DNA from: Heterodontus francisci
Taxonomy: Eukaryota
Direction: 5' to 3'
Length of the DNA: 64,000 bases
NCBI RefSeq assembly: GCF_036365525.1
Contig: NC_090387.1
Span: 88,887,691-88,951,690, forward strand
Below the pieces are notes generated by a model. The model saw nothing but the letters and a program-made list of their open reading frames with translations. It did not search any database and was not told the origin of the DNA. Shown here one piece after another: positions 9,533 to 36,575 of the stretch. The stretch's first letter is position 1, and each line of letters starts with the position of its first letter. A program made the position numbers and the translations under genes.

Positions 9533-9581
9533 ATGAGTGGAGTACTTTGGAGCATGTGTTTCCTCGGAATTTTGTATCCAG
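9533..9581 (+). CDS. IgSF receptor gene 1, exon 1 (signal peptide)
   Basis: ATG at 9533 gives MSGVLWSMCFLGILYP followed by a phase-1 donor CCAG|GTAGCT. The peptide is hydrophobic and leader-like, and the phase matches the V exon acceptor at 9852-9853. Confidence 0.75.
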
Positions 9582-12633: not shown

Positions 12634-12748
12634 ATTATCGCTCAGTCCTCCCCGTCCACTTGATTTATCGAACCGCAGTTGGGATATTGGTAATTATTAC
12701 ACTAATGGTGATCATGGTCAACCACATTACATCAGAAAACGTCCATAG
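12634..12748 (+). CDS. IgSF receptor gene 1, transmembrane exon
   Basis: Acceptor CCTTTTCTAG| (phase 1) and donor ATAG|GTAAG (phase 2). Translation DYRSVLPVHLIYRTAVGILVIITLMVIMVNHITSENVH contains a ~20-aa hydrophobic helix with Arg (CGA 12669-12671) at its N-terminal part. Confidence 0.85.
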
Positions 12749-13404
12749 GTAAGAGAATTTTAAGACCGAATTAAGACAGAATTTTAAGACAGAACATCAT
12801 TGGTGAATTTACAACATGGAAGGAAGATGCGATATTTGCTCATCAATTTGAGAGATTATTACTCAATAAAAGATGATTATGAATGCCCTGAAACCATGCA
12901 AAAATCCAAGAAGTGATATCAGAGTCGGTGTAATTTTGGATGAAAGCAGCAGTTAAAACCGGCTATCATTTTGTACTCAATTCCTAAATGGGACATTGCG
13001 TGTAACCAGCGAATCACAGCTCAGAAGGAGCACACCAAGCCCATCAATCCACCACTTTCTCTTTGAAAGTGCGAGCAGTTTATTCCCAATACCCTGCTCT
13101 TTCACCATAGTATTGCTTCTTTTTCCTGCTCACGTATTAGTCCAATTCCTTTGGAAACTTACAATTGAATCTGCTTCCACCTCCAAATCTGTCAGTGTTT
13201 TCCAGATAATAAAATCTTGCTGCCTGAAACAAAACTCCAAACAAAACTCTCTTATTTGCACAATTACATTGAGACTGTACCCACTGGTTGTCGATCCTCC
13301 TGTCAATGGAAGTATTTTTTTTTCATATTGACTCCATTAAATAAAAAAAACATTTTGAAATGTGAACATCTCATTTTTTTTATTGTTCTTTCATGTGAAC
13401 ATCT

Positions 13405-16400
13405 CTTTTTTTATTATTCTTTCATGGGATGTGGGCGTCTCTGGCTAGGCCAGCATTTATTGCCCATCACTAATTGCCCTTGAGAAGGTGGTGGTGAGTT
13501 GCGTTCTTGAACCGTTGCATTTCAATGTGAGGTAGGCACACCCACAGTGCTGTTAGGAAGTGAGTTCCAGGATTTTGACCCAGTGACAGCGAAGGAACGG
13601 CAATTTAGTTCCAAGTCAGGATAGTCTGTGGCTTGGAGGGGAACTTGCAGGTGGTGGTGTTCCTATGCATTTGCTGCCCTTGTCATTCTCGTTGGTAGAG
13701 GTCGCGGGTTTGGAAGGTGCTGTCTAAGGAACCTTGGTGCGTTGCTGCAGTGCATCTGGTAGATGCTACACACTTTGCCACTGTACATCAGTGGTGGAGT
13801 GAGTGAATATTTTTGGATGGGGTGCCAATCAAGCAGGCTGCTTTGTCCTGGATGGTGTCGAGCTTCTTGAGTTTTGTTGGAACTGCACCCATCCAGGCAA
13901 GTGGAGAGTATTCCATCACACTCCTGACTTGTGCCTTCAAGATGGTGAACAGGCTTTGGGGATTCAGGAGATGAGCTACTCGGTACAGGATTCCTAGCCT
14001 CTGACCTGGTCCTGCAGCCACGGTATTTATAAGGCTACTCCAGTTCAGTTTGTGGTCAATGGCAACCCTAGGATGTCGATAGTGGGCAATTAAGCGATGG
14101 TAATGCCATTGAATGTCAAGGGAGATGGGTAGATTCTCTCTTGTTGGAGATGGTCATTGCCTGGCACCTGTGTGGCACAAATGTTACTTGCCACTTATTA
14201 GCCAAAGCTTAGACATTGTCCCGGTCTTGCTGCATTTCTACACAAAGTGCTTCAGTATCTGAGGAGTCGTGAATGGTGCTGAACATTGTGCAATCATCAG
14301 CGAACATCCCCACTTCAGACCGTATGATTGAAAGAAGGTTATTGATGAAGCAGCTGAAGATGGTAGACCGAGGGCACAACCCTGAGGAATACTTACAGTG
14401 ATGTCCTGGAGCTCAGATGATTGATCTCCAACAACCAAAACCATCTTCCTTTGTGTTAGGTATGACTCCAAACAGCGGAGTGTTTTCCCCCTGATTCCCA
14501 TTGACTCCAGTTTTGCTGGGGCTCATTGATGCCTTGATCGGTCAAAGGCTGCCTTGATGTCAAGGGCAGTCACTCTCACCTCACCTCTTGAGTTCAGCTT
14601 TTTTATCCATGATTGAGCCAAGGTGGTAATGAGGTCAGCAGCTGAGAGGCCATGGTGGAACCCAAACTGAGTGTCAATGAGCAGATTATTGCTAAGCAAG
14701 TGCTGCGTGATGCCACTGTTGATGACACCTTCCATCAGTTTACTGATGAGTGAGAGCAGACTGATGGGGCGATAATTGGCCGGGTTGGACTTGTCCTGCT
14801 TTTTGCGTACAGGACATACCTGGGCAACTTTCCACATTGCCGGGTAGATGCCAGTGTTGTAGCTGCACTGGAACAGCTTGGGGCGCAGCAAGTTCTGGAG
14901 CACAGGTCTTCAGTACTATTGCCAGCACATTGTCAGGACCCATAGCCTTTGCAGTATCCAGTGCCTTCAGTCGTTTCTTGATATCACGCAGAGTGAATCG
15001 AATAGGCTGACGTCTGGCACCTGTGATGCTGGGGCCGTCAGGAGGAGGCCGAGATGGATCATCAACTCGGTACTTCTGGCTGCAGATTGTTGCACATCCT
15101 TCAGCTTTATCTTTCACACTGATGTGCTGGGCTCCCCCATCATTGAGGATGGGGATATTTGTGGCGCCACCTCCTCCAGTTAGTTGTTTAATTGCCCATC
15201 AACATTCACGGCTGGATGTGGTAGGGCTGCAGAGCTTAGATCTGATCCATTAGTTATGGGACTGCTTAGCTCTGTCTATCGCATGCTGCTTATGCAATTT
15301 GGCATTCAAGTAGTCCTCTGTGTAGCTTCACCAGGCTGACACCTTATTTTGAGGTCTGCTTGGTGCTGCTCCTGACATGCCCTCCTGCACTCTTCATTGA
15401 ACCAGGATTGGTCTCCTGGCTTGATGGGAATGGTAGAGAGGGGGATATGTCGGGCCATGAGGTTACAGATTGTGGTTGAGTATAATTTTGTTGCTTCTGA
15501 TAGCCCACACCGCTTCATGGATGTCCAGTTTTGCATTTCTAGACTTGTTCGAAATCTATCTCATTTAGCACGGTGATAGTGCCACACAACACGATGGACG
15601 GTATCCTCAAAGTGAAGGCAGGAACTCATCTTCACAAGGACAGTGCGGTGGTCACTCCTACCAATATTGACATGGACAGATGCATCTGTGGCATGTAGAT
15701 TGTTGAGGACGAAGTCAAGTATGTTTTTTCCTGTTGCTGGTCCCCTCATCAGGTGCAACAGACTCAGTCTAGCAGCTATGTCCTTTAGGACTCGGCCAGC
15801 TCGGTCAGTTGTGGTGTTACCGAGCCACTCTTGGTGATGTACATTGAAGTCCCCCACCCACAGTACATTCTGCGCCCTTGCCACCCTCAGTGGTTCCTCC
15901 AAGTGGTGTTCAACATGGAGGAGCACTGACGCATCAGCAGAGGTAGGGCGATAGGTGGTAATCAGCAGGAGGTTTCCTTGCCCATTTTTGACCTGATGCC
16001 ATGAGACTTCATGGGGTCGAAGTCAATGCCGAGGACTCCCGGGGCAACTCTCTCCCGACTGTATACCACTGTGCCGCCAATTCTGCTGGCTCTGTCCTGC
16101 CAGTGTGACAGGACATACCTGAGGATAGCAACGGCAGTGTCTGGTACATTGTCTATCAGTTATGATTCCGTGAGTGTGATTATGTCGGGCTGTTGCTTGA
16201 CTAGTCTGTGAGACAGCTCTTCCAACTTTGGCACAAGCCGCCAGATGTTAGTAAAGCGGACTTGCAGGGTCGACAGTGCTGGGTTTACCATTGTCGTTTC
16301 CGGTGCCCAGGTCAATGCCGGGTGGTCTGTCCAGTTTCATTCCTTTTTATTGACTTCGTACAACTGAGTGGCTTGATGGGCCATTTCAGAGGGCATGTAA

Positions 16401-16650
16401 GAGTCAACGGCATTGCTATGGATCTGGAGTCACGTGTCGGCCAGACCAGGTAAGGACAGTAGGTTTCCTTCCCTAAAGGAAAACAGTGAACCAGATTTTT
16501 TTTTTTTATAACAATCGACCATGGTTTCATGAGACTAGCTTGCTTTTTAAATCCAGATTTATGTGGTGGGATTTGAACCCATGCCCCCAGAGCAATATTT
16601 TGGCTCTATGGGTTATTAGTCTAGTTACAATACTACTACACCACTGCCTC
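13405..16650 (-). mobile_element. LINE family B, near full-length decayed copy (tRNA-like head, APE, RT, tail)
   Basis: APE motifs (TNI.GL..PDII.LTES, GDFNVHH, LDFVL, SDH) and RT motifs (NYRPISLL, LDIKAAFD, PQG). Pol III A/B-box-like head at 16560-16650. Confidence 0.85.
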
Positions 16651-16729
16651 CTCTCATCACCTTCCAGATTTTCTGCGCTATGAAGAGCACTCGCAGCTTC
16701 TTCATTTTCTGAACATAGCTGAAGTTCCT

Positions 16730-17505
16730 CCAAGTAACATTCACGCCACACAAGTGCCAGGCAATGACCATCTCCAACAAGAGACAATCTAACCATCTTC
16801 CCTTGACATTCAACGGCATTACTATCGCTGAATCCCCCACTATCAACATCCTAGCGGCTGCCATTGACCACAAACTGAACTGGAGTAGCCACATTAATAC
16901 CTTAACTACAAGAGCAGGTCAGAGGCTAGGAATCGTGAGGCAAGTAGCTCACCTCCTGACTCCCCAAATCCTGTCCACCATCTACTCGACACAAGTCAAG
17001 AGTGTGATGGAATACTCTCCACTTGCCGGGATGGGTGCAGCTACAACACTCAAGAAGCTCGACACCATCCAGGGCAAAGCAGCCCGCTTGATTGGTACAA
17101 ACATTCACTCCCTCCACCATCGACGCACAGTGGCAGCAGTGTGTACCATCTACAAGATGCACTGCAGCAATTCACTAAGGCTCCTTCAACAGCACCTTCC
17201 AAACCCGCGACCTCTGCCAACTAGAAGGACAAGGGCAGCAAATGCATGGAAACACCACCACCTGAAAATTGCCCTCCAAGTCACCCACCATCCTGACTTG
17301 GAACTATATCGCCGTTCCTTCACTGTCGTTGGGACAAAATCTTGGAACTCCCTTGCTAACAGCACTGTGAGTATACCAACCCCAAATGGACTGCAGCGGT
17401 TCAAGAAGGCAACTCACCACCACCTTCTCAAGGGTAATTAGGGATGGGCAATAAATGCTGGCCTGGCCAGCGACGCCTACATCCCATGAAGGAATTAAAA
17501 AAAAC
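16730..17505 (+). mobile_element. LINE family B, 3' fragment
   Basis: ORF 16764-17441 matches the family B C-terminus. Ends CCCATGAAGGAATTAAAAAAAA. Confidence 0.88.
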
Positions 17506-18125
17506 AGGTGTTACTTTCGTAAACTCCCTTTGATATTTCCCGAAGTCCTAGTGTACTTCCAAAAGTGTGTTATTTAGAAATGTGCTCTAGCTGACGCTTA
17601 GCCGGTGATTTATAAAGGTGATGTATCGCTGATTTGCTTTTGTAATCTATGCCTCTATTTAAAAAGCCCATGATCCTCTATGTTTTAATAGCTTTACCAA
17701 CTTGTCTTGTCACACATATTTCTCACGAATTCGTTGAGCACCCATTTATACTAACTCAAATTCTCTATTAATTTTCAGCCTGTAATTTATTTTTGGTTTT
17801 CATTTTTTTGTTTGTTTTCTTATAGAATCATTTCCATTGTCTGGGTTCCCTGCCAATTTACAATGTAATTCAGGGTATACATTGGTCCGAAAAAATCAAA
17901 GCGCTGCCACCAGTTTTCCGCCTTAGGCTCGAGAAGAGAGAACCAGTGAACAAGCCATAAAAAGTCGTAAATTCAAAAAATGGTCATTTCCATCTAGTTT
18001 TACTGGGAATTACCATGGCGGTGCATATAAATAAGAATAGGGGTTACTAGAATATGATTTTTTAAGACGTCTATCCATGATAATTCCGAAAGGTCTCTCC
18101 TGATTTTGCACTTTTATTTGAACAG

Positions 18126-18210
18126 GAGTCCAGACGAAGAGAGCAGGAAAGACGATGTAAAATGTGGATAGTTAAGCCGGAACGGCGGGAGAGTCCAGCG
18201 AAATATGAAG
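18126..18210 (+). CDS. IgSF receptor gene 1, putative cytoplasmic exon containing an in-frame stop
   Basis: Acceptor CTTTTATTTGAACAG|. Read in phase 2: (R)SPDEESRKDDVKCG*LSRNGGRVQRNMK, with TAG at 18169-18171, ending at a phase-0 donor AAG|GTCATA. The exon is purine-rich and charged. Exons 1-5 give a 275-aa product to the stop. Confidence 0.55.
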
Positions 18211-21200
18211 GTCATAGTTGAAAAGAACAGTTCATTGAGATTCTAAATGTTAATTTCCACGAACGGTTGAATTTGGTCCTCAAACAGTTGGGCGGTTTTT
18301 AGTTTGGGATTATTTCCTTGACTGATGAAGTATGATAGTGAACTCTAAATTCTGTATTTGCGAATTCCTGCTGTTTGCTCACGATGGTCCAGTGAAAACC
18401 CCACTGTAAAGGCTCAAACGCGATTTATCTCACTTCTCCCGAGTTCTGGCGTCTCCTGTCAGAGTTAGGACTGGAGATCAGGAGAATGGCGCGAAATTTT
18501 ATCTTGAAGTTTAGAATCTGGTTTGTTATGTTCTTCAAATAAAAATGTATGTGAAAGAATATACCACTACCAAGAAGATACTGAACACACAAATCAAATG
18601 GTACTTAGGCAAGGCAAAATATGTGAAAACTTTGTAACAGAAGCACTAACCATTAAAAAAAATGGGCAATCTTCCGGAACAAGAATCACAATACTAGCTG
18701 AGTAATTCGCAAAAATTTGGTTCCCATTATCAATCCAAAAATATATCTGACAATGAATGGTGGAATACATTCTACGATATAGAGATGGCTGACGAACTAA
18801 TTAGTGACACATCAATTTGATTAAACTACTTTCCTGAAATACTATAATAATAGCCTTCTCAGTGAAACGTAATTGGCTCATTCAAGAAGTCTCTGTTTGC
18901 TGTGAGGCACAAGACTGACAATCGGGATTGATTCTATGCTGATGAAAGCGAGCCACCTAGATTATTCTGAGAGCTAAAATGAAAAGGCAATTTCTCCGTA
19001 TGAAAGGGATTACAGCGTCCTGGTGAGACCGATCCTGGAAACATCTCGAGGGATGTGCAATGGGATCCAATGGTTGTAGGAAATCTGATATGTTAATACT
19101 TAAGAAAAAAATATATTCATAACAGTCCCGCAGCTTATGGAAATTATGCCAAATGCGATGCAAGAAGCTATAGGAGGATTTTCTGTTGTTTTCATTATTA
19201 GCAAATGTTACATTCCAATAAACTGACAACAAATCAATTGCCTATAGAGAAATATTTACAAATAATAGTAATTTACCTGGAAAACAATTATCCAATACAT
19301 CTTTGAACAACAAACGACAGATGTAGTATGGAAGATAATTTAAAACAATAAATCTGTAAGGAAATCATAGGCGAAATTTAGATAGAAAGGGGGATTCCTA
19401 CGAAAAGAAAAAAAATAACTCTAAATCTTCCCAATACGTTAGACGTGAAAAGTTCGGAAACTATGCATTAGGCTTGCCAACAATGGAGTGAGCATCGCGT
19501 TTAATAAGATCTCGATATTTGTTACCCAATACAGGGAAGGGGACCTATGGTTTGGGAGCATCGTTCTTCTATATGCAAATAGAAAGAGAGCAGAGGTGTA
19601 GCTGTTGGTAATGCTACAGAATCGCTGAATGCTAGGCTGTATGTTTGGTCAAGTTACGATTTATTTCAAGTAGACAAATGGTGCAATTCCAGATACTTTG
19701 AAAGGTGGAAACTGAAATCAATTTATCACTCAGCATTGTGTACAAGTAGTGCAAGTCTGAGATACAAAATGGACCTGTATGTCAGAATCACATATAATCA
19801 TTGGTGAAGACTACAGTAAAAAAACATTTAATAAGAGTGTGTCATGATTGGTGGGTTGTTCAGGCGAATGCATGTTATAAATTGCGTGCTAATTGTGAAA
19901 ACAATGAAAGTCCGGAAAGGAACAGTTATGTATCATCTAATAGCTAGTCCGTCTTTATGAGACATGCCTTAAGTACTGTGTCATGTCTCTCTTATTGTTG
20001 GTAACTGATCGGTTGCGTATTTCTAGTGTTTCCTGTTTTTAAGTGAGATTTGGAAGGTCTTTTTTCTCTTTAATTGTACTGCAGAAATTCTGCTTATTTG
20101 GAGTACTATTGTACATCATGGGAGACGCTGACAATTAAAGTAAAGGGATCGGCTTTGAAAAGAAGCTTCAGATGAGGAAGGTGTTGTCCTTTGATCATGA
20201 CTGCAAGATTCTTAAACAGTTAGCTAAATACTTTGAGCATTATGTGGCCTTACAGCCGTTAATATGTTGGTTTCTGGGTGGAAAGCCATAAGTTGCAAAC
20301 ATCCATGCAGTCAACCACACACTTAACTGGTTGTTCAACCATGAGTGCACTGAGTTGCAGTATGTACGTGCACAAAGGAAGGACTGGCGGGGCGACAGCT
20401 GAATAGACGCATATTTCTATTATTATCTATCAATTGTGTAATGTCTTGGCGGAGAAATACTGAACGAGATGCTGTGTAAATGACCAAGGCCTGAAACAAG
20501 CATTACAAAAACTGCAGCAGAACTATTTATTGAACATAATGTACACCTACATAATGTAGTAGAAATAGCAGCCTCAAGCAATCCAGTACCTAGACACAAG
20601 ACATTGCGAAAGTTACAATTGTACAAAAGATCCAGGATGTGGCAAAAACATACCGCGTATCTATTGGGCAACATCCGTGATAAATAAGTTTTGCTTTCCA
20701 CAAAGCTTGCTGAATTCAATGGAACTAATTGAAGCAGGCTTGCCTGTGGCTAATATATAGTCGCAGGTTGACTGGTAACACATCGTGGCAGGGAAGCTTG
20801 GAGTTTGGTGACGAGCCTGCCAAACAGTTTAATTATTTCTTACCTTGGCAGCTTTCTTTCTCTATCTCATTGTTTCTACATTTTTCAAAGGTCTTTCACC
20901 TCGGCTACATCGCTTTGGGTTATGTGCTAATGGCTTCCATGTCAATATTGGAATTATGAGACAAGAAAAGGTTTATGGTCTATCTTCTATTACCCTTGTA
21001 ATAGATTCAATTCAATGATAATAGAATTATTGAAAAATCGTAGCAGTCAATATCTAGAAATTAGTCAACAACAAATCTGACATGACGCGAGAAATTATTG
21101 GAATGTTTTGGAAAACTCGAAAAGATTAAGCATGAGGAGAATAGCTAATGTGGCCGATGTGTAAATTAAATATTTAGGAGAAGCAGTTAATTACTGTCGA

Positions 21201-21252
21201 GTTCGGGAAAGCAACAAAAGGCATCTGGCATTGCTTCCTCTTCACTTTTTTC

Positions 21253-22132
21253 AAAGAACAAAGAAAGGACAAAGAAAATTATAGCACAGGAACAGGCCCT
21301 TCGGCCCTCCAAGCCTGCGCCGATCCAGATCCTCTATCTAAACATGACGCCTATTTTCTAAGGGTCTGTATCTCTTTACTTCTTGCCCATTCATGTATCT
21401 GTCTAGATACATCTTAAAAGACACTATCATGCCCGCATCTACCACCTCCGCTGGCAACGCATTCCAGGCACCCACCACCCTCTGCGTAAAGAACTTTCCA
21501 CGCATATCCCCGCTAAACTTTTCCCCTTTCACTTTGAACTCGTGACCCCTAGTAATTGAATCCCCCACTCTGGGAAAAAGCTTCTTGCTATCCAACCTGT
21601 GTATACCTCTCATGATTTTGTACACCTCAATCAGGTTCCCCCTCAACCTCCGTCTTTCTAATGAAAATAATCCTAATCTACTCAACCTCTCTTCATAGCT
21701 AGCGCCCTCCATACCAGGCAACATCCTGATGAACATCCTCTGCACCCTCTCCAAAGCATCCACATCCTTTTGGTAATGTGGCGACCAGAACTGCACGCAG
21801 TATTCCAAATGTGGCCGAACCAAAGTCCTATACAACTGTAACATGACCTGCCAACTTTTGTACTCAATACCCCGTCCGATGAAGGAAAGCATGCCGTATG
21901 CCTTCTTGACCACTCTATTGACCTGCGTTGCCACCTTCAGGGAACAATGGACCTGAACACCCAAATCTCTCTGTACATCAATTTTCCCCAGGACTTTTCC
22001 ATTTACTGTATAGTTCACTCTTGAATTGGATCTTCCAAAATGCATCACCTCACATTTGCCTGGATTGAACTCCATCTGCCATTTCTCTGCCCAACTCTCC
22101 AATCTATCTATATTCTGCTGTATTCTCTGACA
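21253..22132 (-). mobile_element. Young CR1 LINE, 5'-truncated (3' ~880 bp)
   Basis: ORF 21338-22159 is nearly identical to the C-terminus of ORF 51628-52731. Tail (AAAGAAC)n. Confidence 0.93.
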
Positions 22133-23744
22133 TATATCATATATTTTGTTCCCTCCCACTTCTAGGAGATACTCATTGTTTAAAATAAAATGAAAATGAT
22201 GTCGGGCTGTCTGAAGTATTATGTAAAAATAAAGATCGTCAATCGAATTTTACAACATAGTATAGCGAGTAGAACATCCAGTACTTTCACCAACAAAGCT
22301 ATGCTCCATTGATTACACACTGGATCCAAAGTGAACGATCCCACACAGACCCACTGTGCACTTCATCTGCCATCGTTATAAATCAGCTATTCTGTATATG
22401 TCTCGTCATAACTTGCTGTTCTCATCGATATGACTAAATATGCATCCTCATCTACTGTAATTTGTGACTATAATGAAAGTCACTGTCATGTATGGGGAAA
22501 AGCTGAAGTGTCAACAATATCCTGGGGGAAATCAACTTGTCACACCCCGCCAATCAGTGAACATTTCCTTTATGCTGACCTCCAGTAAGCTATTAATTAC
22601 CAATGGATGGTATCAACGGTCATCTACATCCGGGCTTGTTTTTTTGCAAACAATCTTTTGAGTGGATTATTTTAAAATGAGAGCATTGAAGCTATACATC
22701 AGAGTCATATATCAAAATGTGCAACTGTAATTGCACACATCAATCTATGTCAAACTAACATATAAATAGAATCATTTCTGTACCTGCAGTGGAAAAATAT
22801 AACAATATTCAACTGGTGACATACGCAACGAATTGTTAAGAAAGAACAGAAAGTGAGGCATGAGCAGAATTTTGGCTTCCTGGCTCTGAGAATATCATTA
22901 AATACAAATGTTAGTGAAAGTAGAGTTGACCATTCACATCATGATATGTTTGAAACGATTCACACTGTCGGTTAAGGGTTTTTTTTCTCAGCTGATTAAG
23001 GTACATGTTTTATGAACTCGTATTACATTTTGAGACGTTCCTACCTCCACCCACCACCTCCACCCACCACCTCCACCACAACCAGCCGCACCCCCACCCC
23101 CCGGCCCAGCCCTCGCCACTCCGATAATTGTAAGCAATGTGGATGAAAACATATAATTAAACAGAAGTAATGGTCCGAAATTTGTGGTTGTTAATATTAC
23201 GAAACTGTAAACATCGCCATCATCACTGCAGAAAATTGATAGCAACGTCCTGGTATCTGCACATGCACAGCTAAACGCGGAAATTTGTAAGTGGTATCCT
23301 GGGACTCAATAGATTTGGCAGTCTTCGCAGATGCAATCGACACAGAATCAGTGTTTTGAGGTTAACTACAACTTTGTATGCTCTATTCTCGCGGTACAAA
23401 CCAATGAAAAAGTTAAGCCATGTTGAAAGATGTGTAACTGTTTTTCTTTTATGACATACTATTTCATAATTTCTGCTGAACCACCTCTCAGGTACCGAGT
23501 AACTAATATTACGTGTGGAGTGTCATCAGCTCATTCCATGAGAAAAATTCCGTAACTTCTTAAACTATGAACAAATAATTTTCATTTGTTTTGTTTCTGA
23601 TATTTCAGTATCTACCTTAATCCCATGTGCATGCCTTCATTGTTAATTTTCTTTTCTGTAAAATAATTTAAAACGTGAGTGATTATACCTGTTTTTTTAC
23701 TTCCTGGTTTGCTGTCTGCGAATACTCCTCACTCTGTAACAGAT

Positions 23745-25130: not shown

Positions 25131-25496
25131 AAATCTCACCCCCTCCCCCCCCCCCCACCCCCCCCCACCACCCCCCCCCCCCCCCCCCAACCCCCACCGG
25201 TGAATGTGAGAGTGGTGGCAGGTGACTAGATGGCTTCATAGGATTTTAGAATCATAGAACGTTTATGGCACAGAAAATGGCCACTTGGTCCATCGTGTCT
25301 GTGCCGACCATCAAACAGCCACCCAACCTAAACCCTTCCAGCATTTGCTCCGTAGCCCTGCAGGTTATGGCACTTCAGGTGCGTATCCAGACACCTTTTA
25401 AGTCAGTTGAAAAGTTTCTGCCTCTACTACCCTTACAAGCAGTGATTTACAGAACTCTACCACCCTCTGTGCAAAAAAGCTTTATCTCATCTCATC

Positions 25497-26522: not shown

Positions 26523-26886
26523 TAAATCTCCCCTGCAATCTTTCTACCAATCGCCTGGAGCTCCGAGATGAATGGGCTGAGTTTGCCTATAAAAGTCCAT
26601 TATTATATCAGATAAAGCAGTCAGGCATTCATTGAGACCCTGCTTCGCTCGTGGGCAGGTACCTAACATGTCTATATGTTAATGCTGAAGACACATACAA
26701 TCTCCTTAACAACGTAAATGCTATTGGTGCTGATTGTCATTACAGGAAGCTCGGCAGTGGCCTAACTCCCGAATTAAGTGCATCCCAAATTACACTTTTC
26801 AGTTCTTCGTCCTCCAGGTCTGTGTGAACCTGGATGGATGTTTCGATCCGGGTGTTTCTATCGATGGGTCCGACACGAATTGTAAT

Positions 26887-27820
26887 AAAGAACAAAGAAC
26901 AAAGAAAATTACAGCACAGGAACAGGCCCTTCGGCCCTCCAAGCCTGCGCCGATCCAGATCCTCTATCTAAACATGTTGCCTATTTTCTACGGGTCTGTA
27001 TCTCTCTGCTTCCTGCCCATTCATTTATCTGTCTAGATACATCTTAAAAGACACTATCGTGCCCGTGTCTACCACCTCTGCTGGCAACGCATTCCAGGCA
27101 CCCACCACCCTCTGTGTAAAGAACTTTCCATGCATATCCCCTCTAAACTTTTCCCCTCTCACTTTGAACTCGTGACCCCTAGTAATTGAATCCCCCACTC
27201 TGGGAAAAAGCTTCTTGCTATCCACCCTGTCTATATGTTGGAGAATTTTCTGAGCTTTGCTAATTATTACTTAACTTTGTAGAAGCAGAAAAGCAGGACA
27301 CAGCTTGTAGCTAATCTAACCACAACCAACGGTCATAAATTGTAGACAGAGCAGATAACCACAATCAGACATTACGGCCAGATATGGTGTCTGGGGTGGG
27401 GATTGAATTAAGGAACTAGCTTGTTATTGTTGAAACTGATGTTTTGCTGACCTCGGACCCTGCATGGTGCACCGTTACGTAGGCAGTCTTGTGGGTGTTT
27501 ATCTAATTGTGAAACTGTTAGCTCTGCCTCTTTTATACTATATAAATCCACGGCGATCTGTAGCTCTTTGGGAGTAGCACTGAACCGCATTTAGGTAAGG
27601 TGTTATTCCCCATGATATCATGCAATAAAGGGTTTGATTCTCAACGTCTGAGTCCGGTGAATTTGTTCAACAATTGGGCACAATCTGGATTTTCTCCAAC
27701 ACTATACCTCTCATGATTTTGTACACCTCAATCAGGTCCCCCCTCAACCTCCGTCTTTCTAATGAAAATAATCCTAATCTACTCAACCTCTCTTCATAGC
27801 TAGCGCCCTCCATGCCAGGA
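26887..27820 (-). mobile_element. Young CR1 3' fragment split by a solo LTR
   Basis: Colinear with the copy at 21253-21720 on both sides of the 27236-27701 insert. Confidence 0.9.
27236..27701 (+). mobile_element. Solo LTR (466 bp)
   Basis: Ends TGTTGGAGAA...TTCTCCAACA (10-bp inverted termini, TG..CA). 5-bp TSD CTATA at 27231-27235 and 27702-27706. Internal TATATAAA near 27539 and AATAAA at 27624. Confidence 0.85.
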
Positions 27821-27824
27821 AATA

Positions 27825-28715
27825 TTCCCTGACTCTTGACACAGGGCTTCAGCCTGCTCCGCCCTTAAAGGAATTGAGACCGTAGCCGAGGTAACAGCGT
27901 CTGGGGTATCCATTGCCCACCCAGAATGACTGTTCTCAGATGTGGAACCACATTAACAGGTCGCTGTCCGTGAGATGGTATCTCCGGATAAATGCCGCCA
28001 TTATTATCATCACGCTCTGCCCCTAGACTTACCGTGCGCATTTACAGCCAAGACCGCAGTGTCGTGCTGCTTCAGCTGACCCTGTAGCTCATAGATCTTT
28101 AACTTACACGCAGAAGGCTCAGCTTCCTGTGTCGGCTGGCTAACCGTCATCTGGATGCCGCCTTGGCCGTCCTCCAAGTCTTGCTGAAGGTTTCGAACTT
28201 GGACCTCTAACATCTGAGGTCGGTCCTTTATTTGCGGGGTCCGCAGCGCTTGCGCATCTGTCACTGCAGTACTCGCCCTACATTTGTCAGTCGACCTTTG
28301 AAATCACTCAATTTGTCCTTTACCTTCAGGCGTTCTAATACCCACTTTCCTTTGCTTTGGTAAAACTTTTATTTAACTGCTTATTCTCTTCCTGGAACGT
28401 TTCCTCTCTCATATCACCGCGCTGTGTACACAAATGGGCCGCATACTGTAATAGACGCATTTTTTAAAAAAAATTAATCTTGCGCAGGTTAATCTGTTCC
28501 TGGATCCCAACAACTGCTCCTTTTCACGAATCCCGCACCCACCCCCCCCCCCCCACCCCCCCACCGCCACCCCCAACCCTTAGCCCTTAGCAACAAAACT
28601 GATGTAGGGGACACTGTGAAACCACCTTCTCAATTTCCCCTCGCCACCTCTCTTGGTTTCCTTTGCTAAATGGCAATTAGACTCGGCCCTCCCTGCACAT
28701 GTGATTTCTCTGAGG
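27825..28715 (-). mobile_element. Probable LTR-retrotransposon gag-like remnant
   Basis: Coiled-coil-like ORF 28010-28264 and a degenerate Cys/His knuckle-like stretch near 27920-27960. It seems to continue at 32370-32500 beyond the Tx1 insert. Confidence 0.35.
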
Positions 28716-28717
28716 GA

Positions 28718-31700
28718 TTTTTTTTTTATTACCAAAATATACTTCATTCATAAAATTCTGTAGAAATTACATTACCAGTTTCAAACAGCACCAAGTCGAA
28801 AAATACAAACAGTGCAAAGGAGGTCTGTTTGCTTCATTACAATCATGAGTTGCCTCACAAACCTTCCATTTCACATCTGTCATGCCAATTACATTTTAAC
28901 ATTTTACAGCAAATGAAAATTTTCCCGATACAGTTCGATGGGTTTCCCATGGATCCAGCCACTCAATTCAGCTTGAATGGGGGACCTTACACTGTGGTCT
29001 TTCCCCATTGAGCCTTTGCTGCGGCTGCCCCAAGCTTTAGTGCGTCCCTCAGCACATAGTCCTGGACCTTGGAATGTGCCAGTCTGCAATATTCGGTCGT
29101 GGACAACTATTTGCTCTGGAAGACCAGCACGTTTCGGGCAGACCAAAGGGTGGCTTTCACCCAATTGATAGTCCTCCAGCAGTAGTTGATGTTTGTCTCG
29201 GTGTGCATCCCTGGGAACAGCCCGTAGAGCACAGACTCCTGTGTTGCAGAGCTGCTTGGGATGAACCTCGACAAAAACCACTGCATCTCTTTCCACACTG
29301 CTTTGCAAAAACACATTCCAGGAGGAGGTGGGCAACTGCCTCTTCCCCACCACAGCCACTGCAGGGGAATTTCGCAGAGGGGGCGAGACTTCGGGCATGC
29401 AGGAAGGATCTGACGGGGAGGGCTCTTCTCACCACCAGCCAAGCTACGTCTTGGTGCTTGTTTGAAAGTTCTGGTGATGAGGCATTCCGCCAAATGACTT
29501 TGGCGGTCTGCTCAGGGAACCATCTGACAGGATCCACCGTCTCCTTTTCCCGTAAGGCCTTGAGGACATTCCCTGCAGACCACTGCCTGATGGATCGGGG
29601 GTCAAAGGTGTTTTCCCGCAGAAAATGCTCCACGAAGGATAGGTGGTATGGCACGGTCCAGCTGCATGGAGCATTCCGCGGCAATGTGAGCAGGCCCATC
29701 ATTCACAACACCGGAGACAGATAGAACCTCATCACGTAGTGAGACTTGGAGTTTGTGTACTGGTGGTCGACACACAGCTTGATGCAGCCGCACACGAAAG
29801 TGGTCATCAGGATGAGGGCCACGTTGGGTACATTTTTCCCTCCCTTATCCAGAGATTTGAACATCATGTCCCTCCGGACCCGGTCCATTTTGGATCCCCA
29901 GATGAAGCGGAAAATGGCTCGGGTGACTGCCACAGCGCAGGAGTGGGGTATGGACCAGACATGAGCCACATACAGCAACAACGTGAGCGCCTCGCACCTG
30001 ATGAGCAGGCTCTTACCCACAATAGAGAGAGATCGCTGCCCCCACATGCTCAACTTTTGTTGTACCTTGGCTACTCGCTCCTCCCAGGTTTTGGTGCACG
30101 CTCCAGCCCTTCAGAACCATATCCCCAGCACCTTCAGGTAGTCTGACCTGACGGTAAAGGGGACAAAGGATCGGTCAGCCCAGTTCCCAAAGAACATGGC
30201 CTTGCTCTTGCCGTGGTTAACTTTGGCTCCCGAGGCCAGTTCGAACTGGTCACAGATGCTCATCAGTCTGTGCACGGACAGCGGATCCGAGCAGAAGACG
30301 GCGACGTCATCCATCTACAGAGAGGTTTTAACCTGAGTGCCTCCACTGCCTGGGATTGTCACCCCTCTTATGCTCGCATCCTTATAATAGACTCCGCAAA
30401 GGGTTCAATACAGCAAGCAAACAAGACTGGGGAGAGAGGACAGCTCTGTCTGACTCCAGATTGGATCTGGAAACATTCCGATTCCCACCCATTGATTGAG
30501 ACTGCCTTACTGATGTTTGCGTAGAGCAGTTTGATCCAATTGCAGATTCCCTCTCCAAACCCCATTTTGGAAAGCACGTCCATCATGTAGGTGTGCGATA
30601 TCCCATCAAAAGCCTTCTCCTGGTCCAGGCTGATGAGGCAGGTGTCCACCCTCCTGTCCCATACATAGGCGATCGTATCCCTGAGTAGCGCGAGACTATC
30701 AGAGATCTTTCTGCTGGGTACAGTGCAGGTCTGATCAGGGTGTATCACCAACTCCAGAGAAGACTTGACTCAACTGGCTATTACTTTGGACAGAATCTTG
30801 TAGTCAATATTAAGCAGTGAGATGGGCAGCCAATTTCTGATTTCAGCCCTCTCCCCCTTCCGCTTGTAGATAAAGGTGATGATGCCTTTCCTCATGGATT
30901 CTGGCATGTTGCAGGCCAGGAGCATACTCACGTATACTTCCAGCAGGTCCGGGCCGACCCAGTCCCACAGGGTCGAATACAACTCGACCGGTAAGCCATC
31001 GCATCCGGGAGTTTTACTCATCTTGTAGGACTCAACGGACTTTGTCAGCTCATCCAGAGTTAGCGGCTTGTCCAGTCTCCGCCTCGTGCTGTCATCTAAG
31101 ACCTCTGTGATAGATGACAGGAAGGACTGGGAGGCTCTGCTCATACAGCCCAGCATAAAAGGATTTGCTGATCCTTAGTATGTCAGCCTGCGAAGACGTT
31201 ACCGAGCCATCCTCTTTCTTCAGGCTGCTGATAACAGAACTCTCTCTGTGTACATTTTGGAAGAAGTAACGCTAGCACGTCTCATCCTGCTCGATGGAGC
31301 GGACTCTGGACCGGAAGATGATATTGGAGGCTTCAGTGGCAAAGAGCGAGACCTGCTGGCTCTTCACCTCTTGGAGGTCCTCCTTGACCTCGACCCCCAT
31401 AACTGTAGCCGGAGCAGATTTTGCATACTTTTCTGGAGTCGGGACATTTCCCTCTGTCTCTCTCTCGCTCTTTGAACACCTTTTTGGATGAAGAACCTCT
31501 TGATATTCTCCTTGATCGCTTCCCACCAGTGAACTGGAGACTCAAAGAGGGGTTTCACGGTCCTCCAACCTTTGTAATCCTTTTTGAGTTCCTCAACGTT
31601 CTCTGGGGTCAGCAGTGTAGCATTGAGCTTCCACGTCCCTCTGCCAACCCGCTGGTCGTCCTGTAAGTGACAGTCGGCCAATAAGAGGCAGTGGTTGGAG

Positions 31701-32369
31701 AAGAACACCGGCTTGATATCGGTGGATCGGACTACTTTTTATTTACTCACCTATCCTGGAACGGACCGACCCATCCGATCTTGACTATGTGTATCTGCAC
31801 TGCGCTCTGTCAGCAGGTTTGCTGCAGACGTCGTGCAGTTTGGCATCTTTAACTGTTTCTATTAGGAATCTGGACGTAGCGTCCAGTTTGCTATCGTCTC
31901 TGCCGGATCGTCCAGCCGCATCATTGATGCAGTTGAAGTCACCGCCTAGGATGACCGGCCTGGACGTCAGCAGCAGCAGTGGAGCTGCTGGAAGATGGTG
32001 AGCCGCTCGCTGCGTTGTACCTGGGCGTACACGTTGATCAACCAGAGTGGAGCATTGTTGTACATTACGTCTGCTACGAGGAGGCGACCGCCCACCACCT
32101 CCCTAACTTCAGGGATGGTGAAATTACCTCCCCGCAGCTGAATACCCAGGCCGGAGAAACGGCAATCATTACCCCCTGACTTGATCGATGGTTCGTGGGA
32201 CCACCATCGCGACCAGTGCCTGTAGGTGCTGAGGTGTGGTATTCCACACTCCTGCAGAAACAGTAGGTCGGTTTTGACCTTGGCGAGGTAATCCAAGGTT
32301 GAAACACATCGCGTAGTGGATTTAATGCTACGTACATTCATGGAAGCAATTCTTACACCCATTTTTTTT
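28718..32369 (-). mobile_element. Tx1-clade (L1 group) LINE, ORF2 only, frameshifted
   Basis: MGVRIASMNVRS..FLQEC (APE), KTPGCDGLPVELY, PISLLNIDYKIL, LDQEKAFD, GVRQSCPLSP, MDDV (RT), and a C-terminal C..CGGEE..AHLLLEC zinc knuckle. Poly(A) tail at 28718-28727. Confidence 0.88.
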
Positions 32370-32933
32370 AAAGTTAGTTGTTGCTTCCCAGACCATTTAG
32401 GGATAACTTCACTTTGGAGAAAATTATCCAAAAAATCCTCCCCTGTTATTTTTTGCCGGAATGGCCCCAACTCGCAATCCAGCACAAACACTCACAACAC
32501 TGCCATACTAGTTTTTATTTACTCACCTATCTGGTCGTCATTTCTTACTAGTAATTTGGTTATATAGCTAAACTATAACTTTAACTACCACTGTAGTTGT
32601 CGTAATAACATTTCTTAAGATCTAGTGTAAAGTTAGTAGCTTGATTTTAAATTAGTTGTTAATTACGCTGATTATTTATGTAACTCATTATATACATGTG
32701 AATTAGAAGAAAGGCTGACTATAGTAAATTAAATGACCGCAATTGTTGACAACGCGATCGGTAGGTGGCGCTGTTTTGGCACATGCGCAGATACAGCATG
32801 TGCCACGAAAACGTCACAGCCTGCGACTGTTGCAGCTGCCAGGACTAAAGATGGCGCTGCTCAAAAAATCACAGAGATGAAACCTAACAAACACGTGGCA
32901 GAAATCAATGGCCGGAGTGAGAGAGTGGAGCGG

Positions 32934-33038
32934 GCCGGGGAGAGCAGCGCGGGGGCCGGGGAGATCAGCGCGGGGGCCGGGGAGATCAGCGCGGGGGCCG
33001 GGGACAGCAGCGCGGGGGCCGGGGAGAGCAGCGCGGGG
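32934..33038. repeat. GC-rich minisatellite, 5 x 21 bp
   Basis: Unit GCCGGGGAGA(G/T)CAGCGCGGGG repeated five times. Confidence 0.9.
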
Positions 33039-33059
33039 AAACCAGCGGTAGCAGTGCCG

Positions 33060-33497
33060 GGGAGGGGGGGGGAGAAAGAGGGAGGGGAGGAGAAAGAGGG
33101 AGAGAAAGAGGGAGGGGAGAGGGGGAGAAAGAGGGAGGGGAGAGGGGGAGAAAGAAGGAGGGGAGAGGGGGAGAAAGAAGGAGGGGAGAGGGGGAGAAAG
33201 AGGGAGAGGTCAGGAAGGGGGGAGGGGGAGAAAGAGGGAGGGGGAGAAAGAGGGAGAGGGAGGGGGGAGAAAGAGGGAGAGGGAGGGGGAGGAGAAAGAG
33301 GGAGAGGGAGGGGGGAGAGAGAGGGAGGGGGGAGAAAGAGGGAGAGGGGAGAAAGAGGGAGAGGGGGAGAAAGAGGGAGAGAAAGGGGGAGGGGGAGAGA
33401 AAGGGAGAGGGGGGTGAAAGAGGGAGAGGGAGGGGTAAGGAAGGGGGAGGGGGAGAGCTGGGGAGAGAGGGAGGAAGGGGAGAGAGTGGGGGGGGGA
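33060..33497. repeat. Polypurine (G/A) low-complexity tract
   Basis: About 440 bp almost entirely G/A, with GGGGGAGAAAGAGGGA-like units. Confidence 0.9.
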
Positions 33498-34239
33498 GCA
33501 GCGGAACGGAAGAGGAGCACCTTTATCTGTGCATGCGCCATAAACACAACAGCAAAAGACTTACTGGCCAGTCCCTGGACCCGGTGACACCAAGGTCTTC
33601 GCACGCTCGCTCCCCCCGGCTCTCTACGGCCTCTCGCTTCCGGCCCTCTCCATTCAGCCGTTCCCTCCAGCTGCGGATGCCCAATCCAGTTGCTTTCTCC
33701 CCTACCCAGTTGCTTTCTCTACTTCTCCTCAGTACTTCAGGCATTGCAACTGTTTGGTCCCTGCATTTTGCATGCTCCCTCTCCCCACCCCTCCCCGCAC
33801 TCCCCACCCCTCCCCCTCTTCAAACACCCCTCCCTCTACCCCCCCCCCCCCCCCCCCCACCATAGTTGAATATCTGAAGTGCAGTTGCAAAGTCGGGGAA
33901 ATAGCATGCAAAACAAAACCTCAACAATTCTGGGTTTAATTATTGAAAAGTTTTATTAAGTTCATTAAGTATCCGAGGAACTGCTGTGCATGGATACATG
34001 AGTGTTGTGTCCAGCATTCCCGTTAGACAGACAGGCCGATTCTCTGCTATGCACAGCTAAAGAGATTGTTCCTGGAGAGCCTTGTGGTGAATAAACGCTT
34101 GGCTCTCTATTCCACTACTGTATTGTCCATGTGAAGAAGGCAAAGTCACAAGAGTCTGTGCATGTGCGCACCGCGGCGCATCCTGATGACGTTCTCCGAT
34201 GAAGTAGCGTTGTCATGAATTACTTTGTACTTCATAACA

Positions 34240-35930
34240 TTGCCAGTGCTGTCACTGAACTGCAACAGCTTAGCTAACGGTGCGACTAGTTCTCAAGAAC
34301 TAATCTTCAATGCGAAAGCGGGGATGTTGTCAGAGCCCAGAGCCTTTGATGCCTCCAGCGACTTCAGCCTTTTCTTGAAATCAAGTGGAGTTAACTAAAT
34401 TGGCTGAAAGCGGACATCTGTGATGCTGGAGAACAACATAGATCATCACTGGGCACTTCCAATTGAAGATGATTGTAAATGCTTCAACCTTGTCTTTTGC
34501 ACTGACGTGCTCCCATTAAGAATGGGGATGTTTGTGGCGCCTCCTTCTCTGAATAGGTGTTTAATGGCCAACGCCATTCACCACTGGAGGCGAAAGGACT
34601 GTAAAGCTTTGACCTGATTCATTTGTGTTGGATCACTTAGCTCTGGCAATAGAATGTTGCTTCCGCTGTTTAGCATGCGCATAGTCCCGTGCCCTAGCTG
34701 CGCCAGGTTGCATCCCAGTTTAAATATGTCTGGTGTTGCTCCTGGCATGCTCTTCTACATTTTTTTTGATTGAACCAGGAATGGTCACCTGACTTGATGG
34801 CAATGATCGACTGAGGAGTATACCAGTCCATGATGTTACAGATTGCGATTGCATACAATTCCAGTGTTGCTGTTGGCCCACAGTGCCTACTGGATGCCAA
34901 GTTGTAAGCTGTTAGATCTGTTTACCAGGTGGTAATGTCACTCAACACGACGCAAAGTATCCTCAGTGTGAAGATGGGACTTTGGCTCCACGAGGACTGT
35001 GCGATAGTCACTCCTAACAAGTCTTACATTGACAAATGCATCTACAAGTGGATTGGTGAGGACAAGTTCAAATACGTTTCTCCCTCACCACCTGCTGCAG
35101 GCCATGTCTAGCATATATTTCCTTCAGACCTCGGCCTGCAGTGGTTCTAAAGAGCAGCTCTTCATGCTGGACATTGAAGTCCTTGCTCCAAATGGTGTTA
35201 AACATGGAGGAGCACTTATTCATTAGCTGAAGGACGGCGCTAGGTGGTATTCATCAGGAGGTTTCCTTGTCCAGATTTGACCTGATGCCATGAGTCAATG
35301 TTGAGAACCCACAGGTCACCTCCTCCCGAGTGTATACCTCTGTGCCAGCACCTCTGGTAGGTATGGCCTGACAATGGAACAAGACATAACCAGATATGGA
35401 GACGGAGAAGTCTGGGACAATAGCTGTAAGGTATGATTCAGTCTGTATGACTGTGTCAGGTGGTTGCCTTATTAGTCCGTGCCAACCCTCCCAATGTTGG
35501 CACAAACCACCAGAAGTTAATGAGCTGGAACCTGTAGGGTCCACTGGGCAGGTTGCGCTGCTGTGATTTCTGGGCCCTCGGTCGCTGCCAGGTGGTCCAT
35601 CGCTTTTGTCTTCATTTAACTTTTCTGTAGTGGTGCAATTGAGAGGCTGTTTAGGCATTTCATAGGGCAATTAAGAGTCAATCACTTTGCTTTGAGTCTG
35701 GAGTTATACGGCAACCAGACTTGGGCTGGACGGCAGATTTCCGTTCCTGAAGGGCATGGATGGACCAGATGGGGTTTTGCAGCAATCCGGTAATTCGACT
35801 ATTTTTCTTTTCTTTTATATATTCCAGATTTATTAATTAATTGATTAAAATGATTTGAACTCATGATCCCAGGCCATTAGATGAGGCTTCTGGATGACTT
35901 GCCGAGCAGCATTACCGCTATGCTACCGTC
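34240..35930 (-). mobile_element. LINE family B, older copy (tRNA-like head and APE region)
   Basis: Colinear with 14850-16650. ORF 35254-35670 contains QPPDTVIQTESYL..SGYVLFH. Confidence 0.75.
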
Positions 35931-36431
35931 TTCCTCCTACTTACACAATACTTAATCGTGAATTGCCCCTTCGATTCAATTTTTATAAAATTGATGTAAA
36001 CCATTCATCAACAGGATAGTGTTTTCACAGTGAGATTTGCATTTTATCTGTGCTCTTAAGACAAAATTTTAAATTATTCAACTTTAGACTGGCATCGCAA
36101 ATCGGGACTGCCGTTGGAACAGTCAGACTCACCTGCCAGCCAGGTCGGCTAAAAGCAAGAGTTCGCAATGTCGGGGCTAACGGAGCGGAATGTCTATCTA
36201 TCTGATTTAATGGTCGTTACCGCTTCATTAACTCCAATTTCAAGTCGCTGCAATCAGCCACAATAAAGGAAAAGCAAACTTCCAATTTTTGCAGGCATGC
36301 TAGTTCTAAGTATCGAGTGCAGATTCACCAAACCGGCAATTAAAACATTTGATAAGAAACCATCACTGCCCATGTTATAAATCTGCTGACTGGTAAAAAA
36401 CAGAATATAACACTATATCTAAATATTCCAG

Positions 36432-36575
36432 ATTCCCCAAATGGAAGCTAAAGAAGGACTGATCTACTGTGCTCTAGATTTCGTCGGTCAGAAGAAAGGT
36501 CCCAGACCTACGCGGCACGAAGACACCTTAGTATATGTCCACGTGCAGTTCAAGAAACAGAACAGCATGCTCTGA
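36432..36575 (+). CDS. Terminal cytoplasmic exon with two ITIM-like motifs (probably the last exon of receptor gene 1 or a relic of it)
   Basis: Acceptor TTCCAG|, phase 0: IPQMEAKEGLIYCALDFVGQKKGPRPTRHEDTLVYVHVQFKKQNSML*. LIYCAL and LVYVHV fit (I/V/L/S)xYxx(L/V). AATAAA follows at 36808 and 36896. Confidence 0.7.
   Translation: MPQMEAKEGLIYCALDFVGQKKGPRPTRHEDTLVYVHVQFKKQNSML

What the first reader, a model, noticed from the sequence alone, without database searches (positions are those of the whole stretch)
12634..36575. Possible inhibitory-to-activating receptor switch: TM arginine, premature stop and stranded ITIM exon
Seen in sequence: the TM helix begins LIYRTAVGILVII (Arg codon at 12669-12671). 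The next exon has TAG at 18169, yet the frame stays open to a phase-0 donor at 18210, which joins in frame to the two-ITIM exon at 36432 (336 aa if the TAG were a sense codon). Established: activating paired receptors (NKp30, NKp46, LILRA, FcaRI) use an N-terminal TM Arg to recruit FcRgamma/CD3zeta and have short tails, and activating KIR/Ly49 arose from ITIM-bearing ancestors by tail truncation. The stop lies 39 nt before the predicted last junction, so under the 50-55-nt rule it would escape NMD. Inference: gene 1 is an activating derivative that retains its old ITIM exon as 3'UTR.
Basis: partly seen in the sequence, partly recalled or inferred. Interest (0 to 1): 0.85.

Follow-up and report, generated by a model that had tools for sequence, protein, structure and literature searches.

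The report
Shark activating receptor; ITIM exon orphaned
Gene 1 is an ordinary member of an old shark lineage of activating-type immune receptors (arginine in the membrane helix, short tail), and the ITIM exon 18 kb downstream shows no link to it, so no recent inhibitory-to-activating switch is seen here.

Summary

- **Gene 1 structure.** Leader, V, C1, Arg-TM, short tail. It belongs to a large cartilaginous-fish V-C1 receptor family that NCBI names 'SIRP-alpha-like'.
- **The Arg-TM is old.** The same TM exon (61-85% identical, Arg invariant) occurs in Scyliorhinus, Chiloscyllium and Heptranchias. There it always carries a short tail that lacks the family's ITIM module.
- **The stop is not unusual.** The S. 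canicula orthologue stops two codons after the gene-1 TAG position.
- **RNA evidence.** An RNA-derived contig joins the TM exon to 18126. It then runs unspliced through the proposed donor at 18210. A poly(A) signal lies at 18538.
- **The open frame is chance-level.** Staying open for 13 codons up to a phase-0 GT has P about 0.46, and three phase-0 GTs are available.
- **The ITIM exon.** It is a true homologue of the family's terminal ITIM module, but it stands alone. No other inhibitory exon lies anywhere in the window, and no listed protein contains it.
- **A paired partner exists.** A Heterodontus francisci inhibitory protein has a V domain 98% and a C1 domain 88% identical to gene 1.

Verdict: a new member of a known kind, of modest interest.

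The parts
9533..9581 (+). Gene 1 leader exon (16 codons + 1 nt, donor CAG|GTAGCT)
   Evidence: The peptide is 75% identical to the leader of H. francisci XP_067906072 and 69% to Heptranchias P0162.
9854..10165 (+). Gene 1 V(J)-type Ig exon, phase 1 to 1
   Evidence: Pfam V-set, E 1.3e-10. It is 98% identical to the V domain of H. francisci P0163/P0001. The end has a J-like motif, VKGTLVQLVVY.
10977..11282 (+). Gene 1 C1-set Ig exon, phase 1 to 1
   Evidence: Pfam C1-set, E 1.3e-8. It is 88% identical to P0163 and 60-70% to the Arg-type orthologues.
12634..12748 (+). Gene 1 stalk/TM exon with Arg (CGA 12669-71), phase 1 to 2
   Evidence: It is 82-85% identical to Scyliorhinus orthologues and 61-67% to Chiloscyllium and Heptranchias, with Arg invariant. 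Spliced to 18126 in an RNA contig.
18126..18560 (+). Gene 1 last coding exon of the TM form: 14 codons, TAG at 18169-71, then 3'UTR. The 3' end is inferred from AATAAA at 18538.
   Evidence: X5 contig record 16 lies colinear on 18124-18300 and runs on about 113 nt further. Poly(A) signal. Homology to orthologue tails. The end coordinate is an inference.
18211..18212 (+).
18907..18977 (+). Candidate alternative last exon (..HLDYSES, then stop) for a TM-less isoform; phase-1 acceptor behind a pyrimidine tract
   Evidence: 8 of 15 residues and the stop codon match the last exon of S. canicula isoform X3, P0181. Splicing not shown here.
36432..36575 (+). Solitary family-type terminal ITIM exon (LIYCAL ... 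LVYVHV, TGA); not linked to any gene by evidence
   Evidence: It is 33-43% identical to ITIM modules of inhibitory family members, with the same 24-residue Tyr-Tyr spacing and a matching C-terminal end. No other inhibitory-type exon lies in the window.

Best explanation
Gene 1 (leader 9533, V 9854, C1 10977, TM 12634, last coding exon from 18126) is the activating-type member of a cartilaginous-fish V(J)-C1 paired-receptor family. Its TM helix carries a conserved Arg near the outer end, and its tail is 24 aa with no tyrosine motif.

By analogy with NKp46, FcalphaRI, LILRA and SIRP-beta, it most likely signals through an ITAM adaptor that binds the Arg. That step is inferred, not shown.

The exon at 18126 is the normal last coding exon of this lineage. 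TAG 18169 is a lineage-specific stop that shortens an already ITIM-less tail.

The ITIM exon at 36432 is a leftover or unlinked terminal exon of an inhibitory family member. It lies in a transposon-rich tandem cluster that evolves by gene birth and death. It is not part of gene 1's message, as far as the evidence goes.

An inhibitory gene in Heterodontus francisci has an almost identical ectodomain and supplies the opposing partner.
For: **Splicing and 3' end.**
- X5 contig record 16 is 326 nt at depth 5.25.
- Its first 36 nt account exactly for the depth of 0.99 in the bin that holds the TM exon (5.25 x 36 / 191).
- The rest lies on 18124-18300 with no differences and runs on past the stretch.
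- So TM-to-18126 splicing is real, and 18210 is read through.
- AATAAA lies at 18538.

**Orthologues.**
- They are S. torazame P0160/P0184, S. canicula P0183 (275 aa), C. punctatum P0022/P0151 and Heptranchias P0161/P0162.
- All have the same TM motif with Arg and tails of 8-47 aa without the family's ITIM module.
- In an ungapped alignment from the exon start, the TAG position is Lys in three orthologues.
- S. canicula stops two codons later.
- Gene 1's read-through frame ends at TAA 18244 after 39 codons. S. torazame has 37 and C. punctatum 41, which fits one ancestral terminal ORF.

**Age of the Arg module.** A second Arg-TM, short-tail lineage includes the chimaera Callorhinchus.

**Paired partner.**
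- P0163 is 98% identical in V and 88% in C1. It has an uncharged TM and four ITIM modules.
- In both domain trees, gene 1 and P0163 pair with 100% support inside a clade that holds the Arg-type genes.

**ITIM exon.** It is homologous to family modules but solitary.
Against: - Transcript evidence is a single low-depth contig from one run of one animal. Contigs drop rare isoforms, so occasional use of the 18210 donor is not excluded.
- I could not lay reads on the ITIM exon, so whether it is expressed is unknown.
- In C. punctatum two gene models part exactly after codon 28 of the homologous exon. The unspliced model reads Gly-Glu-Cys there, which fits a G|GTGAGT donor. A donor near this place may therefore be old, with a further 3' exon in that species.
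- Gene 1's product is not in the protein collection searched, so it may be unannotated or judged non-coding.
- Adaptor binding is untested.
Confidence: 0.68

Rival explanations
1. Gene 1 was an ITIM-bearing receptor, TAG 18169 truncated it, and the ITIM exon is still spliced on as 3'UTR. That would make it a recent inhibitory-to-activating switch.
For: - The frames fit. The 18210 donor is phase 0 and the ITIM exon is read in phase 0, giving 336 codons in all.
- The ITIM exon is intact, lies on the same strand, and has no upstream exons of its own.
- Three orthologues have Lys where gene 1 has TAG.
- A donor may exist at the same place in C. punctatum.
Against: - The contig reads through 18210, and the donor is weak.
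- The frame fit is at chance level.
- No Arg-TM orthologue carries the family's ITIM module, and their tails beyond the TAG position are unrelated to the ITIM exon.
- The Arg-TM, short-tail form predates the split of the shark orders.
- A conserved alternative last exon at 18907 marks the gene's end about 17 kb before the ITIM exon.
Confidence: 0.1
2. The ITIM exon is the working last exon of an inhibitory gene or isoform whose upstream exons I failed to recognise. They may be too diverged, or the exon may be reached from a distant gene by long-range splicing.
For: - The ORF is 47 codons (P about 0.06 by chance) with both ITIMs intact.
- It has an AG acceptor and its stop at the family's usual place.
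- Poly(A) signals lie 230-440 nt downstream.
Against: - No inhibitory-type TM or juxtamembrane exon lies anywhere in the 64 kb at relaxed thresholds.
- None of the fetched annotated family proteins contains the exon. The best match is 43% identical over 28 aa.
- The nearest upstream inhibitory receptor noted by the scan is more than 100 kb away, with gene 1 in between.
Confidence: 0.1
3. Gene 1 is a decaying gene. The TAG is a disabling mutation in a receptor that is no longer used.
For: - Its product is absent from the protein collection.
- Expression is low and was seen in one of three runs guessed to be RNA.
- The stop comes earlier than in S. torazame and C. punctatum.
Against: - All five exons are open and have good splice sites.
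- The message is spliced correctly.
- The S. canicula orthologue has the same 275-aa length.
- The lost tail segment is not conserved among orthologues.
- The V domain is kept 98% identical to its inhibitory partner.
Confidence: 0.1

Closest known systems
Mammalian paired activating receptors with an N-terminal TM arginine (NKp46, FcalphaRI, LILRA, NKp30)
   Same: Arg lies a few residues into the TM helix, the tail is short and motif-free, and an ITIM-bearing counterpart has a near-identical ectodomain. The analogy rests on established knowledge of these receptors; the anatomy is shown.
   Different: The ectodomain here is V(J) plus one C1-set domain. It is not C2/I-set (LRC receptors) or V alone (NKp30). 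No orthology is claimed and the adaptor is unknown.
SIRP family (SIRP-alpha with ITIMs; SIRP-beta with TM Lys and DAP12)
   Same: It has a VJ-like V domain followed by a C1-set domain, with paired inhibitory and activating forms. NCBI's automatic names for the shark relatives are 'tyrosine-protein phosphatase non-receptor type substrate 1-like' and 'signal-regulatory protein beta-1-like'.
   Different: - It has one C1 domain, not two.
- The charged residue is Arg near the outer end, not a central Lys.
- The ITIM tail is built of repeated LTYAALD...TVYAE modules.
- Orthology to SIRP was not tested.
Activating KIR/Ly49 that arose from inhibitory ancestors by tail truncation
   Same: Activating and inhibitory forms share ectodomains, and exchange between them is evident. 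P0163 pairs an Arg-lineage ectodomain with an inhibitory TM and tail.
   Different: Here the activating TM and tail form a separate, ancient exon set, not a truncated ITIM tail. If anything, the recent exchange gave an inhibitory gene the gene-1-type ectodomain.
Non-rearranging VJ-C1 receptors of lower vertebrates (PRARP, UrIg)
   Same: Both are non-rearranging VJ-C1 architectures in an old vertebrate lineage. PRARP is listed among VJ-type IgSF genes in PMC10751288 and PMC11599192, and UrIg2 appeared as a weak C1 match.
   Different: I could not read a primary description of PRARP in the held library. UrIg has more C domains. Relationship was not tested.

Membership tests
Adaptor-coupled activating paired receptor (functional class) | Basic residue inside the TM helix | tested here: met
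   CGA Arg at 12669-71. The best 19-21-aa hydrophobic window includes it, and only 16 apolar residues follow. It is invariant in 7 orthologue models.
Adaptor-coupled activating paired receptor (functional class) | Short cytoplasmic tail without ITIM or ITAM | tested here: met
   The tail is 24 aa (NHITSENVHR + SPDEESRKDDVKCG) with no Tyr. The stop is present in an RNA contig.
Adaptor-coupled activating paired receptor (functional class) | Inhibitory counterpart with a closely similar ectodomain | tested here: met
   H. francisci XP_067906072 (P0163) is 98% identical in V and 88% in C1, with an uncharged TM and four ITIM modules.
Adaptor-coupled activating paired receptor (functional class) | Physical association with an ITAM adaptor through the Arg | not testable with these tools
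Chondrichthyan V(J)-C1 receptor family, Arg-TM lineage | V-set plus one C1-set domain, and TM motif LPVHLIYR[TS]..G.LVII...(N/D)H | tested here: met
   Pfam, TM alignments, and a clade with 100/99 support in both the V and C1 trees.
SIRP family | V domain followed by two C1-set domains | tested here: not met
   Only one C1 exon lies between V and TM, and there are no further Ig exons in the window. Relatives also have a single C1.
NKp30 (NCR3) | Single V domain directly followed by stalk and TM | tested here: not met
   A C1-set exon at 10977-11282 lies between V and TM.
   The X5 contig runs colinear from 18124 to beyond 18300. This is one contig from one sample, so rare isoforms are not excluded.
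   All Arg-TM orthologues have tails of 8-47 aa unrelated to the ITIM module.
   The position is Lys in three orthologues, but S. canicula stops two codons later, and tails range from 8 to 47 aa.

The most novel reading that the evidence does not exclude
The solitary ITIM exon behind an Arg-TM gene and the H. francisci chimera are two products of recent recombination between neighbouring activating and inhibitory genes. The chimera pairs an Arg-lineage ectodomain with an inhibitory TM and tail. Together they would show tail swapping caught in the act in a shark paired-receptor cluster. The ITIM exon might still be reachable by gene 1 transcripts in some tissues.
Probability: 0.12. Interest if true: 0.6.

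Novelty: new member of a known kind. Interest (0 to 1): 0.35.

Why it matters
It places a textbook paired-receptor arrangement in sharks. An activating form with a TM arginine and an ITIM-bearing form share an almost identical binding domain. The activating TM module also dates back at least to the common ancestor of sharks and chimaeras. That is useful for the history of innate immune receptor signalling, and it gives a concrete pair to test for a shared ligand.

Tried and rejected
I could not fetch the genomic loci of P0001/P0163 or of the orthologues. Their exon structures and any downstream ITIM exon therefore stay unchecked.
- **Run X4** (DNA) had no cover at 17948-18300. It gives no second look at the TAG.
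- **The spliced gene-1 model** was never joined or searched as one protein.
- **Other inhibitory-family exons** (TM, juxtamembrane, further ITIM modules) were sought across the whole window at relaxed thresholds. Only chance-level hits came back.
- **Paper searches** for a description of this shark family found nothing specific.
- **Mustelus P0110** (Arg plus ITIM) was considered as a refuter and rejected. Its orthologues have Gly at that place in an inhibitory-type TM.
- **No complex prediction** was sent, because no shark adaptor sequence was on hand.
Full report
**1. The observation**

- The TM exon (12634-12748, AG...GT) reads ..LPVHLIYRTAVGILVIITLMVIMVNH.., with CGA at 12669-71.
- The next exon opens at 18126 behind a good acceptor. 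It has TAG at 18169-71, then 13 sense codons and GT at 18211.
- The exon at 36432-36575 encodes 47 aa with LIYCAL and LVYVHV, then TGA.
- With the upstream exons that I mapped, the count is 336 codons if TAG is read as sense, and 275 aa with the stop. Those exons are the leader 9533-9581, V 9854-10165 and C1 10977-11282.
- Only 16 apolar residues follow the Arg, so any membrane-spanning window must include it near its outer end.

The 'frame stays open to a phase-0 donor' part is not beyond chance.
- Thirteen open codons have P about 0.46 with this window's base composition.
- Three phase-0 GTs precede the next stop, TAA at 18244.
- AAG|GTCATA is a weak donor.

**2. What the gene is**

Pfam gives V-set and C1-set for the two Ig exons.

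An all-against-all HMMER search with the V exon found a cartilaginous-fish family. Word-index searches extended it. NCBI's automatic names for its members vary: SIRP-alpha-like, SIRP-beta-1-like, NCR3 ligand 1-like and tapasin-related-like.

Members fall into two tail types.
- **Inhibitory type.** The TM is uncharged, of the ..AGC.GG.. kind. The tail is long and built of repeated modules of the form LTYAALD...KK...P....E.STVYAE.
- **Arg type.** The TM has Arg near its start and (D/N)H at its end, followed by a short tail.

**3. Gene 1 belongs to an old Arg-type lineage**

Its TM exon is 82-85% identical to S. torazame and S. canicula proteins. It is 61-67% identical to C. punctatum and Heptranchias perlo proteins. 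The Arg is invariant.

None of these proteins has the family's ITIM module. Their tails run from 8 to 47 aa.

A second Arg-TM, short-tail lineage (..LI[PH]RF.LGFLVIL..DH..) is found in several shark orders and in the chimaera Callorhinchus. It aligns with gene 1's TM at 50% identity.

The activating-type TM module is therefore ancient, not a recent derivative in this gene.

**4. The 18126 exon and its stop**

In an ungapped alignment from the exon start, gene 1 reads SPDEESRKDDVKCG then stop.
- S. canicula reads CRGEEARKNDVKGGKS then stop.
- S. torazame reads CRGEETRKNDVKGRKV...
- C. punctatum reads YRNEETKRNSVTIGKL....

The TAG position is Lys in all three. S. canicula ends two codons later, at the same total length of 275 aa.

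Read past the TAG, gene 1's frame ends at TAA 18244 after 39 codons. S. torazame has 37 codons and the unspliced C. punctatum model 41. This fits one ancestral terminal ORF whose poorly conserved end has been cut short more than once. The sequence after the TAG has no likeness to the ITIM exon.

**5. Transcript evidence**

Three runs from the same sample as the genome are guessed to be RNA. I laid them on 12600-18300. In X5, record 16 is 326 nt long at depth 5.25.
- It lies on 18124-18300 from its 37th letter, with no differences, and runs on beyond the stretch.
- Its first 36 letters explain exactly the depth of 0.99 in the bin holding the TM exon (5.25 x 36 / 191).
- X5 has no cover over 17757-18123.
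- The two-letter overlap (AG) fits the exon junction.

This shows three things: the run holds spliced RNA, TM>18126 splicing is real, and the message continues unspliced through 18210 for at least 90 nt, or about 200 nt by the contig's length.

AATAAA lies at 18538.

The TAG is present in this contig, so it is not an assembly slip. Other individuals were not checked.

This is one low-depth contig, so a minor spliced form cannot be excluded.

**6. A further exon**

About 0.7 kb downstream, 18907-18977 encodes ..DSMLMKASHLDYSES then stop, behind a pyrimidine-rich phase-1 acceptor. It matches the last exon of S. canicula isoform X3 (..DYVPIKRRHLEYSES then stop), including the stop. That isoform joins C1 directly to this exon.

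It is probably the last exon of a TM-less, secreted isoform. It marks the conserved 3' end of the gene about 17 kb before the ITIM exon.

**7. The ITIM exon**

It is a true homologue of the family's terminal module.
- It is 33% identical over 45 aa to the H. francisci modules and 43% over 28 aa to a Callorhinchus one.
- It has the same 24-residue spacing between the two tyrosines.
- Its end (VYVHVQFKKQNS..) resembles VYAEVNFIKKERS of an H. francisci protein.

It is also alone.
- Tails of 33 family members found no TM, juxtamembrane or second-module exon anywhere else in the 64 kb.
- None of the fetched annotated family proteins contains it.
- The gap between 18.5 and 36.4 kb holds several LINE reverse-transcriptase ORFs.

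From gene 1 the ITIM frame can only be reached through the 18210 GT, behind the TAG.
- Joining from the TM donor gives RFPKWKLKKD then stop.
- Joining from the C1 donor gives DSPNGS then stop.

I read the exon as a remnant, or an unlinked piece, of an inhibitory gene in a tandem cluster that turns over quickly. Its expression is untested.

**8. The paired partner**

H. francisci XP_067906072 (P0163, 444 aa) is 98% identical to gene 1 in V, 88% in C1 and 75% in the leader. It has an uncharged TM and four ITIM modules.

In separate V and C1 trees, gene 1 and P0163 pair with 100% support. They sit inside a 14-member clade (100/99) that holds the Arg-type genes of other species. In the C1 tree the other inhibitory members form their own group.

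The inhibitory partner therefore carries an Arg-lineage ectodomain. That is the mark of recent exchange between opposing receptors, as in other paired families.

The scan also noted an inhibitory V-C1 receptor about 66 kb upstream of this window. I did not test it.

**9. Mechanism**

- **Shown:** the anatomy, the splicing of TM to 18126, the stop, conservation of the Arg, and the existence of the partner.
- **Inferred from established knowledge of NKp46, FcalphaRI, LILRA and SIRP-beta:** the Arg recruits an ITAM adaptor, and gene 1 delivers an activating signal for the same ligand that the ITIM partner senses.

**10. Limits**

- In C. punctatum the two models part after codon 28. The unspliced one reads Gly-Glu-Cys, which fits G|GTGAGT. 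A donor near that place may be old, and that species may have another 3' exon.
- Gene 1's product is not in the protein collection.
- The spliced model was not joined or searched as a whole.

**11. Verdict**

The activating-type call is right. The switch-with-stranded-exon story is not supported. This is a new member of a known kind.

Noticed in passing
window 18907-18977 (+): Small exon-like ORF ending ..HLDYSES then stop. It matches the last exon of S. canicula isoform X3 of the orthologous gene, and is likely the last exon of a secreted, TM-less isoform of gene 1.
   Followed up: partly
window 9533-18560 (gene 1 as a whole): No protein matching gene 1 is in the 5.8-billion-protein collection, although close H. 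francisci paralogues are. The gene seems unannotated, or the window comes from an unannotated assembly.
   Followed up: partly
P0163 / XP_067906072 (H. francisci), not in the window: This inhibitory receptor has V and C1 domains that group with the Arg-type lineage rather than with other inhibitory genes. It looks like a recent ectodomain exchange between opposing receptors.
   Followed up: partly
P0110 / XP_078066431 (Mustelus asterias), not in the window: Its inhibitory-type TM reads YRS where orthologues read CGS or SGC. Its second ITIM tyrosine is His. It is a better candidate for an inhibitory receptor on its way to something else than gene 1 is.
   Followed up: partly
window 13364-17565: The intron between the TM exon and 18126 is almost all high-copy repeat. 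Contig depths reach 1e4-2e6 in all four runs, and T>G at 15986 is seen in nearly all contigs, reflecting the repeat family's consensus.
   Followed up: no
window 60769-61089 (+): The V exon of a second family gene is about 25% identical to gene 1's V. It has Gly/Asn and Ile/Ser where the two canonical cysteines should be. Its C1, TM and tail exons were not found before the window ends.
   Followed up: partly
window 32733-33900: A long GA/GGA-rich low-complexity tract gives 250-280-aa ORFs on both strands. It produced spurious matches to Glu/Arg/Lys-rich tails.
   Followed up: no
P0022 versus P0151 (C. punctatum), not in the window: Two models of the orthologue part exactly after codon 28 of the exon homologous to 18126. 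The unspliced one reads Gly-Glu-Cys, as a G|GTGAGT donor would.
   Followed up: no
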